This document shows, piece after piece, positions 9,128 through 33,379 of a stretch of 64,000 nucleotides of DNA. Origin of the DNA: Heterodontus francisci. Taxonomy: Eukaryota. The stretch spans positions 98,576,116-98,640,115 of the forward strand of contig NC_090378.1 of NCBI RefSeq assembly GCF_036365525.1. The letters are read 5' to 3'. The notes beneath the pieces were generated by a model, which saw only the letters and a list, made by a program, of their open reading frames with translations, was not told where the DNA came from and ran no database searches. A program made the translations under genes and the position numbers. The stretch's first letter is position 1; each line of letters opens with the position of its first letter.

Positions 9128-9414
9128 CTCATTTCCCGGCGGAGCAGCAGGAGAAGGTAGCGACTCTTCGGTGGGTGAGTGAAGGCATCAGGAGCTGTGT
9201 TTTAAAAGTAAGTACTTACTGTTTTACTTACTGTTTTCCTTGTCTTTGAGTTTCTTTTGGCGCCGGAGGAACCGGAAGCTGGTCGGCAGCGAGGACTCCT
9301 GGGTAGGTATTTTCCTTAAAGGTGCGGAGCTCCGTGGACTCGGCCTCATTTCCCGGCGGAGCAGCAGGAGAAGGTAGCGACTCTTCGGTGGGTGAGTGAA
9401 GGCATCAGGAGCTG
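9128..9414 (+). repeat. 70-bp direct repeat (9128-9197 and 9345-9414, period 217 bp) in the CR1 5'UTR
   Basis: ctcatttcccggcggagcagcaggagaaggtagcgactcttcggtgggtgagtgaaggcatcaggagctg occurs twice, identical. Confidence 0.95.
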
Positions 9415-9988
9415 CAGTGACCGGGCCTCTGGCACGGGGTCCTGCACTGTGGCTCAGAAGGGAAGGAGGGAGAATGGGAGAGCACTAGTCATCGGGGACT
9501 CGATGGTGAGGAGTACGGACAGGCGGTTCTGTGGGCGCAGGCGAGACGCACGGATGGTTTGTTGCCTCCCTGGTGCCAGGGTCCGTGATGTTTGTGATCG
9601 CGTCTTCAGGATCCTTAAAGGGGAGGGGGAGCAGCCAGAGGTCGTGGTGCACATTGGCACCAACGACGTAGGAAGGAAGGGTGGCACAGATGTTAGAAGT
9701 GAGTTTAGGGAGTTAGGCTGGAAGCTGAAAGCTCGGACGGACAGAGTTGTTATCTCTGGTTTGTTGCCGGCGCCACGTGATAGTGAGGCTAGGAATAGGG
9801 AGAGAGCACAGCTGAACACGTGGCTGCAGGAATGGTGTAGGAGGGAGGGCTTCCAGTTCTTGGATAATTGGACTGCATTCTGGGGAAGATGGGACCTGTT
9901 CAAACAGGACGGGCTGCATCTGAACCAGAGGGGCACCAATATCCTGGGAGGGAGGTTTGCTAGTACTGTTCGGGAGGGTTTAAACTAG
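9392..9988 (+). CDS. CR1 ORF1 esterase (SGNH hydrolase) domain; N-terminus missing
   Basis: VIGDS, CLPGA, VHIGTND and DGLHLN blocks. No ATG precedes the GDS motif, and the zinc-finger/coiled-coil region seen at 16286 is absent. Confidence 0.85.
   Translation: MSEGIRSCSDRASGTGSCTVAQKGRRENGRALVIGDSMVRSTDRRFCGRRRDARMVCCLPGARVRDVCDRVFRILKGEGEQPEVVVHIGTNDVGRKGGTDVRSEFRELGWKLKARTDRVVISGLLPAPRDSEARNRERAQLNTWLQEWCRREGFQFLDNWTAFWGRWDLFKQDGLHLNQRGTNILGGRFASTVREGLN
9976..9988 (+). promoter_or_regulatory. Putative -1 ribosomal frameshift site G_GGT_TTA_AAC_TAG at the CR1 ORF1/ORF2 overlap
   Basis: X_XXY_YYZ heptamers phased in the ORF1 frame, ORF2 open in the -1 frame, and the same heptamer at 17199-17205 in another CR1 family. 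Confidence 0.55.
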
Positions 9989-10068
9989 TTTGGGAGGGGG
10001 ATGGGAACCGGACTTGTAATCCAGGGACCAGTGGGTCCACTCAGAAAGACAAAGAGTGTAGTGAGGTA

Positions 10069-12879
10069 TTGGGGAAGGTAGCACTGTCGCAGAGGACAGA
10101 TGGGCACGGAGAAGGGTTAAAGTGCGTATACTTCAACGCAAGAAGCATCAGGAATAAGGTGAGTGAATTGAAGGCGTGGATGGGCACTTGGGACTACGAT
10201 GTTGTGGCCATCACTGAAACGTGGATAGGTGAGGGGGAGGAATGGTTTTTGGAGGTACCTGGTTATAGATGTTTTCATAAGATTAGGAATGGTGGTAAAA
10301 GAGGTGGGGGGGTGGCATTGTTAGTTAGAAGTAGTGTAACAACTGCTGAAAGAATTTTCGAGGAGGATCTGCCGACTGAGGCACTGTGGGTTGAGGTCAG
10401 GAACAGGAAAGGAGCAGTCACCTTGATGGGAGTTTTCTATAGGCCCCCCAATAGCAGCAGGGAGGTGGAAGAGCAGATTGGGAAACAGATTTTGGAAAGG
10501 AGCAGAAGTCACAGGGTAGTAATTATGGGGGATTTCAACTTCCCAAATATTGATTGGCAACTCTTTAGATGGAATAGTTTGGATGGGGTAGTGTTTGTGC
10601 AGTATGTCCAGGAAGCTTTTCTGACTCAGTATGTAGACTGCCCGACCAGAGGGGAGGCAATATTGGATTTGGTACTAGGTAATGAACCAGGGCAAGTGAT
10701 AGAGCTGTTGGTGGGCGAGCACTTTGGAGATAGTGATCACAATTCTGTAGCATTCACTGTGGTAATGGAGAGGGATAGGTATGTGCAACAGGGCAAGGTT
10801 TACAATTGGGGGAAGGGTAGATATGATGCTGTCAGGCAGGAACTGAGGAGCATAAGTTGGGAGCATATGCTGGCAGGGAAGGGCACGGTCGAAATGTGGA
10901 ACTTTTTCAAGGAGCAGATAGTAGGGGCCATTGATAAGCATGTCCCTGTCAGACAGGGAAGGGATGGTCATGTGAGGGAACCGTGGTTGACAAGAGAGGT
11001 TGAGAGTCTTGTTAGGAAGAAGAAGGATGCGTATATAAAGTTGAGGAAAAAGGGCACAGGCATAGCTCTGGAGGGATACAAGATGGCCAGGAGGGATCTG
11101 AAGAAAGGGATTAGGAGAGCTAAGAGAGGGCATGAAAAATGCTTGGCGGGTAGGATAAAAGAAAACCCCAAGGCCTTTTACGCGTATGTCAGAAATATGA
11201 GGATGACTAGGGGGACCGTAGGTCCGGTCAAGGACAATAGCGGGAGACTGTGTGTTGAGCCGGAAGAGATAAGTGAGGTTTTGAATGAGTACTTCTCTTC
11301 GGTATTTACGAATGAGAAGGGGTGTATTACTGAAGAGGACGGTGGGAAGCAGACTGGTAAGCTCGAGGAAGTGCTCGTTAGGAGGGAAGATGTGTTGGGG
11401 TTTTTGAATAACTTGAAGATAGACAAGTCTCCCGGGCCTGACGGGGTATATCCAAGGATGTTATGGGAAGCAAGGGATGAAATTGCAGAGCCGCTGGCAA
11501 TGATCTTTTCATCTTCTCTGCTGACGGGGGTGGTACCAGGTGATTGGAGGGTGGCAAATGTTGTGCCCCTGTTCAAGAAAGGGAATAGGAACAACCCTGG
11601 GAATTACAGGCCAGTTAGTCTTACTTCGGTGGTAGGCAAGTTGATGGAAAAGGTGCTGAGGGATAGGATTTCTGAGCATCTGGAAAGACACTGCTTGATT
11701 CGGGACAGTCAGCACGGTTTTGTGAGGGGTAGGTCTTGCCTCACAAGCCTGATTGAATTCTTTGAGCAGGTGACCAAGCAAGTGGATGAGGGTAAACCAG
11801 TGGATGTGGTGTACATGGATTTTAGTAAGGCATTTGATAAGGTCCCCCATGGTAGACTTATGGAGAAAGTCAGGAGGCATGGGATAGTGGGGAATGTGGC
11901 CAGTTGGATTAAGAATTGGCTAACTGATAGAAGGCAGAGAGTGGTCTTAGATGGTAAATACTCAGCCTGGAGCCCAGTTACCAGTGGCGTGCCGCAGGGA
12001 TCAGTTCTGGGTCCTCTCCTGTTTGTGATTTTTATTAACGACTTGGATGAGGAAGTCGAAGGGTGGGTCAGTAAATTTGCAGATGATACAAAGGTTGGTG
12101 GAGTTGTGGATACCGAGGAGGGCTATTGTCGTCTGCAAAGGGACTTGGATAGGTTGCAGTGCTGGGCTGAAAAGTGGCAGATGGAGTTTAACCCTGAAAA
12201 GTGTGAGGTCGTCCATTTTGGAAGGACAAACATGAATGCAAAATACTGGGTTAACGGTAGGGTTCTTGGGCATGTGGAGGAGCAGAGAGACCTTGGGGTC
12301 TATGTGCATAGATCATTGAAAGTTGCAACTCAAGTGGATAGGGCTGTGAAGAAGGCATATGGGGTGTTAGCGTTCATTAGCAGAGGGATTGAATTTAAGA
12401 GCCGTGAGGTGATGATGCAGCTGTACAGGACCTTGGTAAGGCCTCATTTGGAGTACTGTGTGCAGTTCTGGTCGCCTCATTTTAGGAAGGATGTGGAAGC
12501 CTTGGAGAGGGTGCAGAGGAGATTTACCAGGATGTTGCCTGGAATGGAGAATAAGTCTTACGAGGAAAGGCTGAACATTCTAGGCCTCTTCTCATTAGAA
12601 CGGAGAAGGATGAGGGGTGACATGATAGAGGTTTATAAGATGATCAGGGGAATAGATAGGGTAGACAGTCAGAAACTTTTTCCCCGGGTGGAGCAAAGCG
12701 TTACAAGGGGTCATAAATTTAAGGTGAAGGGTGGGAGATATAAGGGGGATGTCAGGGGAAGGTTCTTTACCCAGAGAGTGGTCGAGGCATGGAATGCCTT
12801 GCCCGGGGAAGTTGTTGAGTCAGAAACTTTAGGGACTTTCAAAAGTCTTTTGGATAGGTATATGGATAAAGGAGAATGA
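10069..12879 (+). CDS. CR1 ORF2: APE endonuclease + reverse transcriptase (frame open from 9964)
   Basis: EN motifs NARS, TETW, GDFN, LDL, SDH; RT motifs KSPGPDG, YRPVSL, DFSKAFD, PQGSVLGP, FADD. No internal stops. The track start is TTG; the first in-frame ATG lies inside the EN domain. Confidence 0.95.
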   Translation: MGKVALSQRTDGHGEGLKCVYFNARSIRNKVSELKAWMGTWDYDVVAITETWIGEGEEWFLEVPGYRCFHKIRNGGKRGGGVALLVRSSVTTAERIFEEDLPTEALWVEVRNRKGAVTLMGVFYRPPNSSREVEEQIGKQILERSRSHRVVIMGDFNFPNIDWQLFRWNSLDGVVFVQYVQEAFLTQYVDCPTRGEAILDLVLGNEPGQVIELLVGEHFGDSDHNSVAFTVVMERDRYVQQGKVYNWGKGRYDAVRQELRSISWEHMLAGKGTVEMWNFFKEQIVGAIDKHVPVRQGRDGHVREPWLTREVESLVRKKKDAYIKLRKKGTGIALEGYKMARRDLKKGIRRAKRGHEKCLAGRIKENPKAFYAYVRNMRMTRGTVGPVKDNSGRLCVEPEEISEVLNEYFSSVFTNEKGCITEEDGGKQTGKLEEVLVRREDVLGFLNNLKIDKSPGPDGVYPRMLWEARDEIAEPLAMIFSSSLLTGVVPGDWRVANVVPLFKKGNRNNPGNYRPVSLTSVVGKLMEKVLRDRISEHLERHCLIRDSQHGFVRGRSCLTSLIEFFEQVTKQVDEGKPVDVVYMDFSKAFDKVPHGRLMEKVRRHGIVGNVASWIKNWLTDRRQRVVLDGKYSAWSPVTSGVPQGSVLGPLLFVIFINDLDEEVEGWVSKFADDTKVGGVVDTEEGYCRLQRDLDRLQCWAEKWQMEFNPEKCEVVHFGRTNMNAKYWVNGRVLGHVEEQRDLGVYVHRSLKVATQVDRAVKKAYGVLAFISRGIEFKSREVMMQLYRTLVRPHLEYCVQFWSPHFRKDVEALERVQRRFTRMLPGMENKSYEERLNILGLFSLERRRMRGDMIEVYKMIRGIDRVDSQKLFPRVEQSVTRGHKFKVKGGRYKGDVRGRFFTQRVVEAWNALPGEVVESETLGTFKSLLDRYMDKGE

Positions 12880-13304
12880 TGGGGTATAGATTAAATTGTC
12901 CTTGACAGAGGACAAAGGATCGGCACAACATTGTGGGCCGAAGGGCCTGTTCTGTGCTGTATGTTCTATGTTCTATGTTCTATGTACTGCAGCAAATTTA
13001 TTAAGTACAACAGTCTCATCTCCGGCAAGGTTCCATCCTTGGCCTCCATTGCAGCAAAGAAACCAGTAATTTGACCCAACTAACTTGTGCTATTTACAGC
13101 CTACGAGTCTCCTTCGATTCCATCTATCTCATCTCAGCCTTTCAGTATATCTTTCTATTCCTTTTCTCCTAGTTTCCTTTTGAAAGCATCCAAACTGTAC
13201 TTGCATCAACCTCTTCCTGTGGTAATGAGTTCCACATTCTAACCAGAGTAAAGAAATTTATCATTTAATTATTTGCTTCATTAATAACTTATTTATGGCC
13301 ATTA

Positions 13305-15887: not shown

Positions 15888-18800
15888 AGTCAACGTTGAC
15901 TCCAGGATGGTGTGTTGCCTCCCTGGTGCCAGGATCCAGGATGTCACTGAACAGCTGCAGGGCATCCTGAAGGGGGAGGATGATAAGGCAGAGGTCATGG
16001 TACATGTTGGTATCAATGACATAGGTAGAAAAAGAGTGCTGACTTGGGTTGCATTAGAATGCTATAGTGGAAGTTTGGTAACTGGGGAAGTGAGGAGCTC
16101 CTTTCATTTCCTACCGGTCCTTAAAGTGAGGGGAACAGAGAGCTTCCAAAGAGCACAGCTAACTGGTGAGTAAGTCCTGGTGGGTATTTTTCAAAGTGGA
16201 TTGAATTGTCAGTCATTGTTTTAGCAAGATTTAATTGCTTTTTAAATTATAATCTTCGATAGTTTTAAATTTAAAGGGTTTAGTCATGGCAGGAGAGCTC
16301 CTCTTGCTGCATGTGGGAATCTGGGAACATTTCCAGTCCCTGAGACCAGCATGCGTGCAGGAAGTGTGTCCAGCTGCAGCTCCTGGAAGCTCGGGTTTCA
16401 GAGCTGGAACGGCGGCTGGAAACACTGTGGAGCATCTGCGAGTCTGAGAGCATTGTGGATAGCACGTATCGAGAGGTGGTCACACTGCAGCTGAAGGGAC
16501 TTGAGGAAGGAAGGGAATGGGTGACCACCAGGCAGTCCAAGAGAAACAGGCAGGTAGTTCAGGAGTCCCCTGGGGTCCCGCTTGCAAATTGGTAATCCAT
16601 TTTGGAGGTTGATGAGGCTGGTTCCTCCAGGGAGTGCGGACAGAGCCAAGCTTCTGGCACCGCAAGCAGCCTGTCTGCACAGGAAGGGGGAAAGAGAGGA
16701 AGAGCAATAGTAATAGGGGATTCTACAGTCAGGGGAACAGATAAGCTCCACTGTGGCAGTCAACGTGACTCCAGGACGGTGTGTTGCCTCCCTGGTGCCA
16801 GGATCCAGGATGTCACTGAACGGCTGCAGGGCATCCTGAAGGGGGAGGGTGATAAGGCAGAGGTCATGGTACATGTTGGTACCAATGACATAGGTAGAAA
16901 GAGGGATGAGGTCTTGCATCAAGAATTCAGGGAGTTAGGCAGTAGACTAAAAAGCAGGACCTCTCGTTGTAATCTCTGGATTACTCCCAGTGCCACGTGC
17001 TAGCGAGTATAGAAATAGGAGAATAGCACAGATGAATGCGTGGCTTAAGAGTTGGAGCAGGAGGGAGGGTTTTAGATTCCTGGACCACTGGGACCAGTTC
17101 TGGGGAATGTGGGACCTTTACAAGTGGGACTGTCTACATCTGAACCAGAGGGGGACTAACATCCTTGCTAGTGGGTTTGCTAGTGCTGTTGGGAGGAGTT
17201 TAAACAAATTTGGCAGGGAGAGGGGATGCAGACTCCTAGCAGAATAGGGACACAGCTAAGCACAGGAAAGCAAACAAGTCAGAGGGAATACAGTGGAAGT
17301 AAGTTTCAAGGGAGTAAGACCAGGATGGAAGGCCTCTACTTTAATGCCAGGGGTATTGCAGGTAAAACAGATGAGTTAAGGGCAATGATTGACACGTGGA
17401 ATTGTGATATAGCCATCACGGAGACATGGTTGGGGGAGGGGCAGGATTGACAGCTCAATATCCCAAGATATAGAATCTTTAGGCGAGACAGAGGAGGGGG
17501 CATTGCCATATTAATTAAGGAGTCAGATACTGCAGTAAGGAGAGATGATATCTTGGAGGGGGCATCAAATGAAGCTTTATGGGTAGAGTTTAGGAATAAA
17601 AAATTGACAACCACACTGCTAGGTGTTTATTATAGACCCCCAGATAGTCAGCATGAAATATAGGAGCAAATATGTGCACAATTTGCAGAGATGTGTAAAA
17701 ATAATAGGGTAATTATATTAGGTGATTTCAACTTTCCCAACATTAATTGGGATAGTCATCATATTAAGGGCTTAGATGGAGTGGAGTTCTTAAAATGTAG
17801 ACAGGAGAACTTTTTAGCTCAATATGTAGAGGATCCAACAAGGAAGGGTGCAGTGCTGGACCTAATTCTGGGGAATGAAGCCAGACAGGTGGTTGATGCG
17901 TTGGTGGGGGAGCATTTTGGTGATAGCGACCATAACATGGTACAATTTAAGCTTGTTATGGAGAAAGAAATAGACAAGTTGCAAAAAAAAAAAAGGTTTT
18001 GGATTGGGGGAGAGTGAATTTTAGTAAAATAAGGCAACATCTGGCCAAGGTAGACTGGAAAGAGTTACTTGTTGGGAAATCTACAGAAGAGCAGTGGGGG
18101 GGCATTCAAAAAGGAAATGGGGAGGGTACAGGCCCAACATGTTCTCACTAGGGTAATAGGTAGGAGCAAAAAGCCCAGAGAACCATGGATGACCAGAAAC
18201 ATTCAGGGTATGATAAGGAAAAGAGAAGCTTTTAGCAAATACAAGGAGAGCAAATCAATGGAAGCATTAGTGGAATACAGAAAGTGTAGGATGGAGCTTA
18301 AGAAAGCAATTAGGAGAGAAACGAGGGAATATGAGAAAGCTCTGGCTGGTAAAAGTAGGGAAAATCCCAAGATATTCTATAAGTTATATCAATGGGAGGA
18401 GGATAACCAGGGTAAGAGTAGGACCCATTAGGGACCAAAGGGGAAATTTGTGGGTGGAGCCAGAGGACATTGGTAGGGTGTTGAATGAATACTTCACATC
18501 TGTCTTCACCCAAGAGAATGAGGATGTAGATATGGAACTTAGAGAGAGACTGTGAGGTTCTTGAGAAAATTGTCATAGGGAGTGACAAGGTATTGGAGGT
18601 TTTGGAAGGCTTAAAAGTGGACAAATCTCCAGGTCCGGACGATTTGTGTCCCAGGATGCTGTGGGAGGAGAGAGTGGAGATTGCAGGGGCTCTGACCCTA
18701 ATTTTTAATTCCTCTCTGGCCACAGGGGGAGGTGCCAGAGGACTGGAGAACAGCTAATGTGGTCCCACTATTTAAGAAAGGTTGCAGAGATAAGCCAGGG

Positions 18801-32745: not shown

Positions 32746-33379
32746 TGAAGAGGGAAGGAACTGCTGGAAATTAAAGTTTTATTTACAGCCCTAGTCCTTT
32801 CCACAAGCACCTGGTCCCAGCCCATCCCACTGGTACAGTTCCTTCCTGTCCTACCACTGGTTCCAGCGCCCTATGAAATGAAACCAGTCCTTCCCACACC
32901 ACTCCTTTACCCACATGTTGACTTTCCTAATTCGATTTGTCCCTATGCCAATTTGCATGTGGCGCCGGTAATGATCAAGATTACTACCTGTGAGATCCTA
33001 CTTTTCAACTTAGCTGCTAACTCCTGATGCACCCTTAGCAGGACCTCTTCCCTGATCTTTCCCATGTCATCTGCTCCATGTTGGAACAAAACAACTGGAC
33101 GTCCCCTCCCTTTTTAAATTTGTTTCAGCTGTTAGGTCTCTTATTGTGGTTTCTGGCACCAGTTAAGCAACACACCCTTTGGGACACTCAATCCTGACTG
33201 CAACGAATACACAGTCTAGGCCCCTAATTATAGAATCCCCTATAACTACAACCTTTCTACTCTCCATTTCCTCCCCTTGGACTGCTGAGATAATTATTGG
33301 ATAGTTATTATGCGCAGTTAACGTTCAGCCAGAACTTCACTCCAACTAAGCATTTGCAAGATCGAAGCCATCTTGTTTA

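What the first reader, a model, noticed from the sequence alone, without database searches (positions are those of the whole stretch)
9961..10040. Candidate programmed -1 ribosomal frameshift joining CR1 ORF1 (esterase) to ORF2 (EN-RT)
Seen: ORF1 ends CGG GAG GGT TTA AAC TAG (stop 9986-9988). This holds two overlapping X_XXY_YYZ heptamers in the correct phase, G_GGT_TTA (9976-9982) and T_TTA_AAC (9979-9985). ORF2 is in the -1 frame and open from 9964 (..GFKLVWEGDGNRTC..GLKCVYFNARS). It has no in-frame ATG until 10180, inside the endonuclease domain, and the nearby ATG at 10001 is in the ORF1 frame. Just downstream are G-tracts (9992-9994, 9996-10000, 10003-10005, 10024-10026) and a GGACC-agtg-GGTCC hairpin (10025-10038). 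Established: U_UUA_AAC is the coronavirus slippery site; hairpins, pseudoknots and G-quadruplexes a few nt downstream stimulate -1 shifts; L1 ORF2 is made by re-initiation instead. Inference: this LINE makes an ORF1-ORF2 fusion by a gag-pol-like frameshift. I cannot confirm whether this has been tested experimentally for CR1.
Basis: partly seen in the sequence, partly recalled or inferred. Interest (0 to 1): 0.82.

Follow-up and report, generated by a model that had tools for sequence, protein, structure and literature searches.

The report
Conserved -1 frameshift site in CR1 LINEs
The junction between the two genes of this shark CR1 jumping element carries a classic ribosome-slippage signal (U_UUA_AAC, then a stop, then a G-rich tract) that is also kept letter for letter in bird CR1 elements, so CR1 LINEs probably make their reverse transcriptase as an ORF1-ORF2 fusion by -1 frameshifting, much as retroviruses make Gag-Pol.

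Summary
ORF1 (esterase) ends GGT TTA AAC TAG at 9977-9988. ORF2 (endonuclease plus reverse transcriptase) lies in the -1 frame. It is open only from 9964 and has no ATG before 10180, which is already inside the endonuclease domain.

- A second, diverged CR1 copy in the window has the same in-phase TTTAAAC.
- Among 54 bird-type CR1 junctions (ORF1 about 32% identical in protein), 44 have TTTAAAC in phase directly before the stop, and 53 of the stops are TAG. The endonuclease is in the -1 frame in 34 of 42.
- TTTAAACTAG plus AGGGGGA.GGG is identical between shark and bird.
- TTA makes up only 2.7% of the other Leu codons in these ORF1s.
- 108 of 232 esterase ORF1 proteins (sharks, rays, frogs and unnamed representatives) end in LN, as do 89 of 117 bird and turtle relatives. 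The residue before LN varies over 14 amino acids but almost never is one whose codon cannot end in T.
- The ORF2 frame stays open from the heptamer to the endonuclease in every subfamily, while an ATG in the linker is not conserved.

No conserved hairpin, pseudoknot or G-quadruplex was found, so the stimulator is unresolved. Nothing was tested experimentally. The searchable literature holds no report of this. The scan's first readers noted the same site on other pieces of this genome.

The parts
9392..9988 (+). ORF1, C-terminal SGNH/GDSL esterase part. The copy is 5'-truncated: homology to full-length 294-aa relatives begins near 9413, and there is no ATG before the GDS motif.
   Evidence: ORF list; Pfam PF13472, E = 2e-14; 93% identity to P0001, 294 aa; PDB 4c1b, ZfL2-1 ORF1 esterase, E = 1e-26
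9961..9963 (+). TAG in the ORF2 (-1) frame. It sets the upstream limit of the 25-nt ORF1/ORF2 overlap.
9976..9982 (+). G_GGU_UUA, an in-phase heptamer overlapping the conserved one. It is specific to this family and is not conserved in bird CR1 (G_GCU_UUA).
9979..9985 (+). U_UUA_AAC, the conserved in-phase slippery heptamer and proposed site of the tandem -1 slip (UUA AAC to UUU AAA)
9986..9988 (+). ORF1 stop codon TAG, directly after the heptamer. It is TAG in 53 of 54 bird-type junctions.
9992..10007 (+). Conserved purine/G-rich tract GGGAGGGGGATGGGAA, starting 6 nt after the heptamer. The core AGGGGGA.GGG is identical in shark and in 7-8 of 8 bird subfamily representatives. It is the candidate stimulator, but its mode of action is unknown.
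   Evidence: column identities; block shared between families ends at 10006-10009; GGG preferred at its two Gly codons against 25% in the bird endonuclease
9964..10128 (+). AUG-less ORF2-frame leader (..GGFKLVWEGDGNRTC..GEGLKCV). It is open in the -1 frame and closed in the other two frames.
   Evidence: stops in frames -1/0/+1 = 0/2/4
10129..10740 (+). ORF2 apurinic-type endonuclease domain. The first in-frame ATG (10180) lies inside it.
   Evidence: PF03372, E = 1.3e-20, residues 56-259 of the translation from 9964
11581..12273 (+). ORF2 reverse transcriptase domain. ORF2 runs without a stop to TGA at 12877-12879.
   Evidence: (PF00078, E = 2e-36)
12880..12985 (+). 3' UTR and the (ATGTTCT)n microsatellite tail (12961-12985) that ends the element
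10025..10038 (+). It starts 40 nt after the heptamer, lies outside the block shared between families, and is not supported as a stimulator.
17199..17205 (+). The same in-phase T_TTA_AAC at the ORF1/ORF2 junction of a second, degraded CR1 family (59-69% ORF1 identity). It is followed by TTTGGCAGGGAGAGGGGA. In this copy the stop next to the heptamer reads AAA.

Best explanation
This is a 5'-truncated but otherwise intact copy of a young CR1-clade LINE of a cartilaginous fish. In the full-length element one mRNA carries ORF1 (coiled coil plus esterase) and ORF2 (endonuclease plus reverse transcriptase).

Proposed mechanism: most ribosomes finish ORF1 at UAG (9986-88). A minority, with UUA in the P site and AAC in the A site, slip back one base on U_UUA_AAC (9979-85) to UUU AAA. 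They then continue in the -1 frame through an AUG-less leader (FKLVWEGDG...) into the endonuclease and reverse transcriptase. The product would be an ORF1-ORF2 fusion made at a fixed low ratio to ORF1p, as with Gag-Pol.

The stop codon that follows directly and the conserved G-rich tract 6-7 nt downstream are the likely stimulators. How they act is not known.

Shown here: the anatomy, and its conservation at nucleotide level. Inferred: the slip itself, the fusion protein and the role of the G tract.
For: 1. Anatomy. The heptamer is in phase. ORF2 is in the -1 frame. The overlap is 25 nt and contains the heptamer. There is no ATG before the endonuclease's first conserved motif.

2. A second CR1 family in the window has the same in-phase heptamer and a G-rich tract.

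3. Bird-type CR1 loci L001-L080 have ORF1 28-35% identical to the window's. Their relatives are named bird and turtle proteins.
- TTTAAAC sits in phase just before the stop in 44 of 54 junctions. The other ten are single-base variants.
- The stop is TAG in 53 of 54.
- The endonuclease is in the -1 frame in 34 of 42, typically with an overlap of only 16 nt.

4. The constraint is on nucleotides, not on protein.
- TTA makes up 2.7% of 929 other Leu codons in these ORF1s.
- The codon before TTA is GCT, TCT, ACT, GAT, GTT or GGT, so the amino acid changes while the third base stays T.
- Among 108 LN-ending ORF1 proteins, the residue before LN takes 14 identities. Only 2 are K, E, Q, M or W, which have no T-ending codon, against 46% and 31% at the two preceding positions.

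5. TTTAAACTAG and AGGGGGA.GGG are identical between shark and 7-8 of 8 bird subfamily representatives. Flanking coding sequence is 38-54% identical.

6. The leader is open in the ORF2 frame from the heptamer to the endonuclease in 32 of 34 bird copies, and the other two frames are closed in all 34. Leader length differs between subfamilies (33, 60 or 91 codons in birds, 44 in the shark). An ATG in the leader is present in 17 copies and absent in 17.

7. In contigs of four runs from four organisms, many otherwise unlike contigs share only the block from about 9935/9956 to 10009. No variant is listed between 9972 and 10018.

8. ORF1 proteins ending in LN come from sharks, rays, frogs, turtles and birds.
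Against: - No downstream hairpin or pseudoknot is supported. Fold energies are no better than shuffles. RNAalifold on 31 bird junctions gives a weak consensus (-9 kcal/mol, covariation term -0.78) whose long-range pairing has no counterpart in the shark. A canonical G-quadruplex cannot form from the bird motif alone.
- Rfam gives no match.
- No protein, ribosome-profiling or reporter data exist here.
- Half of the bird copies have an in-frame ATG 11 codons before the endonuclease, and the shark leader has near-cognate codons (TTG at 10069, CTG at 10084). Independent initiation is therefore not excluded.
- The bird loci come mostly from one sample and are related copies. The independent lineages with DNA in hand are few: two shark families and several bird subfamilies.
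- Human L1 makes ORF2p without any fusion, so LINEs do not need one.
Confidence: 0.72

Rival explanations
1. Termination-dependent reinitiation, or an L1-like unconventional AUG-independent start. Ribosomes terminate ORF1 at the conserved UAG. The junction motif (UUUAAAC-UAG plus the G tract) holds the 40S or 80S so that it restarts in the ORF2 frame nearby. ORF2p is then made as a separate protein.
For: - The stop is nearly always TAG and sits directly at the motif.
- The G-rich tract is conserved but unstructured. That would suit a ribosome-tethering element as well as a frameshift stimulator.
- L1 ORF2 is translated without needing its AUG, and SART1 uses stop-start coupling (Alisch 2006 and Kojima 2005, as cited in PMC3708506 and PMC5009743).
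Against: - No start codon overlaps or adjoins the stop (TAG TTT GGG in the shark, TAG GTT CGA in birds).
- Reinitiation does not explain three things. One is the T kept at the third base of the codon before TTA across many amino acids. Another is the exact X_XXY_YYZ phase. The third is that the ORF2 frame opens a few codons upstream of the heptamer rather than downstream of the stop.
- Other esterase-ORF1 clades end in QGN or SKN, which would fit other classic heptamers rather than one tethering motif. This last point rests on protein sequences only.
Confidence: 0.17
2. There is no recoding signal. The junction is conserved because the ORF1 C-terminus (..LN) and the ORF2 N-terminal peptide are under protein constraint. 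ORF2 starts independently at an AUG, GUG or CUG in the leader, reached by leaky scanning or internal entry.
For: - 17 of 34 bird copies have an in-frame ATG in the leader, and the others have GTG at the same codon.
- The ORF2-frame peptide FKLxx(K/E)G(E/D)G is similar in shark and bird.
- The second shark family has in-frame ATGs at 17225 and 17324.
Against: - Protein constraint cannot explain the exclusive use of the rare TTA codon, the choice of AAC over AAT (about 50:50 elsewhere), TAG as the stop, or the T-ending codon before TTA.
- The ATG is not conserved and is absent from the intact shark ORF2.
- Scanning would have to pass an ORF1 of about 300 codons.
- The leader between the heptamer and the polymorphic ATG stays open although its sequence is otherwise poorly conserved.
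Confidence: 0.08
3. Chance: a slippery-looking heptamer happens to lie in the overlap of this one copy.
For: - About 2% chance per element by simple counting.
- The 10-mer is not enriched in the window as a whole.
Against: The same heptamer sits in the same phase and place in a second family in the window, in 44 of 54 bird-type junctions, and is implied by LN termini across vertebrate classes.
Confidence: 0.02

Closest known systems
Retroviral and LTR-retrotransposon Gag-Pol -1 programmed frameshifting, and the same heptamers in coronaviruses (U_UUA_AAC) and yeast L-A virus (G_GGU_UUA)
   Same: An in-phase X_XXY_YYZ heptamer lies at the end of the upstream structural ORF. The polymerase ORF is in the -1 frame and has no start of its own. 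The overlap is short. The expected product is a low-ratio fusion protein. The heptamer identities are quoted from established knowledge, not tested here.
   Different: The host is a non-LTR (LINE) element with no protease to cut the fusion. The 0-frame stop directly abuts the heptamer. No hairpin or pseudoknot was found. A conserved, apparently unstructured G-rich tract sits where the stimulator should be.
Human/mammalian L1 ORF2 translation (unconventional termination/reinitiation, AUG-independent; Alisch et al. 2006 as cited in PMC5009743 and PMC3708506)
   Same: A bicistronic LINE RNA, with ORF2p needed in far smaller amounts than ORF1p, and no dependence on an ORF2 AUG.
   Different: L1 has an inter-ORF spacer and no overlap, no slippery heptamer, and a separate ORF2p. 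Here the ORFs overlap by 16-25 nt in the -1 configuration around a canonical heptamer.
SART1 (silkworm telomeric LINE) UAAUG stop-start translational coupling (Kojima et al. 2005 as cited in PMC3708506)
   Same: A LINE in which ORF2 expression depends on events at the ORF1 stop codon and on downstream RNA.
   Different: SART1 has an AUG overlapping the stop. The CR1 junction has none (TAG TTT / TAG GTT), and its ORF2 frame opens upstream of the stop.
Drosophila HeT-A gag frameshift (the only non-LTR frameshifting case listed in the 2016 recoding review PMC5009743)
   Same: Ribosomal frameshifting within a non-LTR retrotransposon.
   Different: In HeT-A the shift is inside gag and the element has no reverse transcriptase. 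It does not link ORF1 to ORF2, and the review lists nothing for CR1.

Membership tests
Canonical -1 programmed ribosomal frameshift signal | X_XXY_YYZ heptamer in phase with the upstream (0) frame | tested here: met
   T_TTA_AAC at 9979-9985, and G_GGT_TTA at 9976-9982. The same heptamer is in phase in 44 of 54 bird-type junctions.
Canonical -1 programmed ribosomal frameshift signal | Downstream ORF in the -1 frame, open across the heptamer and lacking its own conserved start | tested here: met
   ORF2 frame is open from 9964 and the first ATG is at 10180, inside the endonuclease. Birds: -1 frame in 34 of 42, leader open in 32 of 34, ATG present in only 17 of 34.
Canonical -1 programmed ribosomal frameshift signal | Heptamer conserved among relatives beyond what the encoded amino acids require | tested here: met
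   TTA is 2.7% of other Leu codons. The third-base T before TTA is kept through six different codons. Only 2 of 108 residues before LN cannot have a T-ending codon, against 46% and 31% at neighbouring positions. Shark and bird are identical over TTTAAACTAG.
Canonical -1 programmed ribosomal frameshift signal | Stable stimulatory RNA structure (hairpin, pseudoknot or G-quadruplex) 5-9 nt downstream | tested here: inconclusive
   Folds are no better than shuffles. The alifold consensus is weak and not shared with the shark. No Rfam match. A conserved G-rich tract does start 6-7 nt downstream, but the bird version cannot form a canonical G-quadruplex on its own.
Canonical -1 programmed ribosomal frameshift signal | Trans-frame fusion protein, or a measured frameshift efficiency | not testable with these tools
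   No proteomic, ribosome-profiling or reporter data were available.
CR1-clade LINE (non-LTR retrotransposon) | ORF1 with an SGNH esterase; ORF2 with an APE-type endonuclease plus reverse transcriptase; 3' end with a short microsatellite tail instead of poly(A) | tested here: met
   Pfam PF13472, PF03372 and PF00078. (ATGTTCT)n tail at 12961-12985. Nearest named ORF1 relatives are from sharks and rays. No RT phylogeny was made.
SART1-type stop-start coupling | ORF2 AUG overlapping or abutting the ORF1 stop (UAAUG/AUGA) | tested here: not met
   AAC TAG TTT in the shark and AAC TAG GTT/ATT/AGG in birds. No ATG lies at the stop.
2A 'ribosome skipping' peptide at the ORF2 N-terminus (reported for some CR1/L2/Rex1 elements, PMC3708506) | D(V/I)ExNPGP motif in the leader | tested here: not met
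   The leader reads ..GNRTCNPGTSG.., so NPG is followed by T, not P. The second family has no such motif.

The most novel reading that the evidence does not exclude
Frameshifting at -1 is the ancestral and general way in which CR1-clade LINEs make ORF2p. It would have been kept for several hundred million years from cartilaginous fish to birds, with U_UUA_AAC in vertebrates and other canonical heptamers in invertebrate esterase-ORF1 clades: G_GGA_AAC implied by QGN termini and A_AAA_AAC implied by SKN termini. The stimulator would not be a hairpin or pseudoknot but the adjacent stop codon plus a short unstructured G-rich tract, which would be a new kind of eukaryotic frameshift stimulator. The resulting uncleaved ORF1p-ORF2p fusion would tether the reverse transcriptase to ORF1p multimers on its own RNA.
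Probability: 0.3. Interest if true: 0.88.

Novelty: new variant of a known kind. Interest (0 to 1): 0.8.

Why it matters
How the second ORF of bicistronic LINE RNAs is translated is an open question. PMC3708506 states that it is "not clear", and the 2016 recoding review PMC5009743 lists only HeT-A, TART and L1 among non-LTR elements.

CR1 is the dominant retrotransposon of most non-mammalian vertebrates. A conserved canonical slippery site at its ORF1/ORF2 junction has four consequences:
- It gives a concrete, easily testable answer for this superfamily.
- It implies an ORF1p-ORF2p fusion protein, with consequences for RNP assembly and cis-preference.
- It would add a deep-rooted cellular, transposon-borne case to the short list of eukaryotic -1 frameshift sites.
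- Its G-rich, apparently unstructured downstream element could reveal a different kind of stimulator.

It also matters for annotation. CR1 ORF2 has no start codon of its own, and ORF1 is often mis-named in databases.

Tried and rejected
DNA for the ray, frog, turtle and QGN-type ORF1 proteins could therefore not be fetched, and for those lineages the evidence is at protein level only.
- **Scans of viral contigs** with ORF1 alignments found no relatives. A DNA-pattern scan of viral contigs gave 21 matches with no esterase or endonuclease nearby, so they are chance hits.
- **The genome-contig scan** returned only distant or bacterial SGNH genes and two invertebrate-like loci without a comparable junction.
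- **Structure searches.** RNAfold of 45-100 nt downstream in 14 representatives was not better than shuffles. RNAalifold on 31 bird junctions was weak. Rfam found nothing. Inspection of the G runs rules out a canonical or two-layer G-quadruplex built from the bird motif alone.
It starts 40 nt downstream, and the families diverge after 10009.
- **A 2A peptide in the leader** was rejected, because the motif reads NPGT rather than NPGP.
- **A third ORF1-like fragment at 32818-33288 (-)** is degraded and truncated, so it is uninformative.
- **Literature.** Ten full-text searches and several papers gave no statement on CR1 frameshifting. The original chicken and turtle CR1 papers (Haas 1997; Kajikawa 1997), Kapitonov and Jurka 2003 and Wicker 2005 are not held. 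An early remark there cannot be excluded.
Full report
**1. What is in the window**

The region 9392-12985 (+) is one copy of a CR1-type LINE.
- ORF1 (9392-9988) matches the GDSL/SGNH esterase family (PF13472, E = 2e-14). It also matches the crystallised esterase of the zebrafish ZfL2-1 ORF1 protein (PDB 4c1b, E = 1e-26).
- The ORF2 frame (9964-12879) carries an APE-type endonuclease (PF03372) and a reverse transcriptase (PF00078) and has no internal stop.
- The element ends in a short 3' UTR and an (ATGTTCT)n tail at 12961-12985.
- The copy is 5'-truncated. Full-length relatives have about 300-residue ORF1s with an N-terminal Cys motif and a coiled coil. Here the homology starts near 9413.
- The nearest named ORF1 proteins are from sharks and rays.
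- Near-identical sequence is held by runs of at least four differently coded organisms.

**2. The observation**

- ORF1 ends CGG GAG GGT TTA AAC TAG.
- ORF2 is in the -1 frame. It is closed upstream by TAG at 9961-63 and open from 9964.
- The 25-nt overlap contains T_TTA_AAC (9979-85) and G_GGT_TTA (9976-82), both in X_XXY_YYZ phase.
- The first ORF2-frame ATG (10180) lies 17 codons inside the endonuclease domain, behind the YFNARS motif. The ATG at 10001 is in the ORF1 frame.
- For a single element, a phased heptamer in such an overlap has roughly a 2% chance. The 10-mer is not enriched in the window as a whole.

**3. Conservation**

(a) *Second family in the window.* A degraded CR1 family (ORF1 59-69% identical) has AGT TTA AAC in the same phase at 17199-17205. 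It is followed by TTTGGCAGGGAGAGGGGA, and its -1 frame is open into MEGLYFNARG.

(b) *Bird-type junctions.* A scan of metagenome contigs with an ORF1 alignment returned 80 loci whose ORF1 is only 28-35% identical to the window's. Their proteins group with named bird and turtle CR1 ORF1s, so the host is an amniote. Among 54 junctions:
- 44 have TTTAAAC in phase directly before the stop, and the other ten are single-base variants.
- The stop is TAG in 53.
- The endonuclease is in the -1 frame in 34 of 42.
- The overlap is usually only 16 nt, because a TGA in the ORF2 frame lies 13 nt before the ORF1 stop.

(c) *The constraint is on nucleotides.*
- TTA is 2.7% of the 929 other Leu codons in these ORF1s. 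AAC and AAT are used about equally elsewhere.
- The codon before TTA is GCT, TCT, ACT, GAT, GTT or GGT, so the amino acid differs while the third base is always T.

(d) *Alignment anchored on the stop codon.* TTTAAACTAG is identical between the shark and all 8 bird subfamily representatives. After 4-6 variable bases, AGGGGGA.GGG is identical in 7-8 of 8. The flanking ORF1 and leader sequence is 29-54% identical.

(e) *Protein level.*
- Of 232 esterase ORF1 proteins collected (sharks, rays, frogs, and unnamed representatives of 50% clusters), 108 end in LN and 128 end in N.
- Among 117 bird and turtle relatives, 89 end in LN.
- The residue before LN takes 14 identities (G, A, T, Y, S, C, D, H, F, I, N, V and others). 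Only 2 of 108 are K, E, Q, M or W, the residues that have no T-ending codon. Those residues make up 46% and 31% of the two preceding positions. This is the expected footprint of a required U at the first position of U_UUA_AAC.

(f) *Contigs of four runs from four organisms* were laid on 9600-10400 at 80% likeness or more. Many short contigs share only the block from about 9935/9956 to 10006-10009 and then run on into unlike sequence. No variant is listed between 9972 and 10018, although variants are listed on both sides. Contigs drop rare variants, so this shows presence, not absence.

**4. Is ORF2 read from the heptamer?**

- In 34 bird copies with the endonuclease in the -1 frame, the leader between the heptamer and the endonuclease is open in the ORF2 frame in 32. 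It is closed in both other frames in all 34.
- Leader length differs between subfamilies (33, 60 or 91 codons in birds, 44 in the shark), and the leader sequence is poorly conserved apart from its first nine codons.
- An in-frame ATG in the leader is present in 17 copies and absent in 17. Where it is absent, the same codon is GTG.
- The intact shark ORF2 has no such ATG.

An ORF that opens a few codons before the heptamer, stays open through a variable leader and has no conserved start is what a frameshift fusion predicts.

**5. The stimulator is unresolved**

- The sequence downstream of the stop folds no better than shuffles in the shark, the second family and 12 bird representatives.
- RNAalifold on 31 equal-length bird junctions gives a weak consensus (-9 kcal/mol, covariation -0.78). 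It pairs the G runs with CAGCCCAGCTC at the start of the endonuclease, and the shark has no counterpart to that.
- Rfam has no match.
- The shark tract GGGAGGGGGATGGG could in principle form a two-layer G-quadruplex. The bird tract GAAGGGGGAAGGGGA cannot form one by itself. A G-quadruplex is therefore not the conserved feature.
- What is conserved is the stop codon next to the heptamer and a purine/G-rich run starting 6-7 nt downstream. That is where the mRNA enters the ribosome when the heptamer is being decoded.
- Its two Gly codons in the ORF2 frame are GGG in nearly all lineages, against 25% GGG in the bird endonuclease and 42% in the shark ORFs. This points to a preference at nucleotide level.
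- I infer, without a test, that slow termination at UAG and this tract together promote the slip.

**6. Limits of the pattern**

- G_GGU_UUA is specific to the window's family, since birds have G_GCU_UUA.
- Esterase ORF1s that resemble zebrafish ZfL2-1 end differently (..TLHTI..VVQAL). The signal therefore belongs to CR1 proper, not to every esterase LINE.
- A clade of ORF1s from invertebrate-like metagenome contigs ends in QGN in 10 of 12 full-length relatives, and two others end in SKN. These would fit CAG GGA AAC (G_GGA_AAC) and TCA AAA AAC (A_AAA_AAC), but no DNA could be obtained. This is a lead, not a result.

**7. What is known**

- -1 frameshifting at U_UUA_AAC (coronaviruses) and G_GGU_UUA (L-A virus), and Gag-Pol fusions in retroviruses and LTR elements, are established knowledge.
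- For LINEs, the 2016 recoding review mentions only the HeT-A gag shift, the unresolved TART junction and the unconventional initiation of L1 ORF2 (PMC5009743).
- Odon et al. state that the mechanism of ORF2 translation in bicistronic non-LTR elements is not clear, and cite SART1 stop-start coupling (PMC3708506).
- Recent and older CR1 papers that I could read say nothing about overlap, frameshift or slippery sites (PMC13343379, PMC4120745, PMC4316615, PMC3905857).
- Ten full-text searches found no CR1 frameshift claim.
- The first chicken and turtle CR1 descriptions and Kapitonov and Jurka 2003 are not held, so an early remark cannot be excluded.
- Within this scan, at least nine other first-reader notes report the same site on other pieces of this genome and in this window. 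None is marked as checked, and they are not independent evidence.

**8. Verdict**

- The feature is real and conserved at nucleotide level between lineages as distant as sharks and birds. The best explanation is a programmed -1 frameshift that fuses ORF1 to ORF2 (confidence 0.72).
- The main rival is termination-linked reinitiation using the same motif (0.17). It does not explain the heptamer phase or the T signature.
- Independent initiation with purely protein-level conservation (0.08) and chance (0.02) are unlikely.
- The mechanism is of a known kind in a new setting, with an atypical and unexplained stimulator: a new variant of a known kind. Interest 0.8.

Noticed in passing
window 9128-9197 and 9345-9414: A perfect 70-nt direct repeat, 217 nt start to start. 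The second copy ends exactly where homology to full-length CR1 ORF1 begins, so it may be a duplication created at the 5' junction of the truncated insertion.
   Followed up: partly
proteins P0138, P0143, P0148, P0155, P0233-P0242 (QGN) and P0165, P0228 (SKN): Esterase ORF1 clades from invertebrate-like metagenome contigs end in QGN (10 of 12 full-length relatives of P0143) or SKN. These would fit the classic heptamers G_GGA_AAC and A_AAA_AAC at the same place. No DNA was available to check.
   Followed up: partly
proteins P0223, P0178, P0226; PDB 4c1b: Esterase ORF1s that resemble zebrafish ZfL2-1 do not end in LN, so the L2-type esterase LINEs seem to lack this junction signal.
   Followed up: no
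proteins P0001, P0048, P0348, P0014, P0075, P0076, P0093: Database names are misleading. 'SGNH/GDSL hydrolase' entries from Pseudomonas aeruginosa, Proteus mirabilis and Klebsiella pneumoniae are vertebrate CR1 ORF1s (93%, 83% and 45% identical to shark or bird CR1) and are probably contamination. '40S ribosomal protein S24 isoform X2' (Pristis) and the 'TMEM204' and 'GPR139' isoforms (Mobula) contain CR1 ORF1 sequence.
   Followed up: no
window 32818-33288 (-): A degraded third ORF1-like esterase fragment (27% identity). Its tail reads ..AAA ACT TTA ATT TCC, which looks like a mutated ACT TTA AAC junction. It is followed by a long C/T-rich run.
   Followed up: partly
window 17225-17227 and 17324-17326: The second CR1 family has two in-frame ATGs in its ORF2 leader (..GEGMQT.. 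and ..TRMEGLYFNARG..), and AAA replaces the stop next to the heptamer. It is not known whether this reflects decay of this copy or a family difference.
   Followed up: no
window 9600-10400, runs X3 and X16: Runs guessed to be RNA, from two organisms, hold contigs of this CR1 family. One 1381-nt contig in X3 spans 9619-10400, including the junction, with a single difference and no indel. If the run really is RNA, the family is transcribed and the junction is not altered at RNA level.
   Followed up: partly
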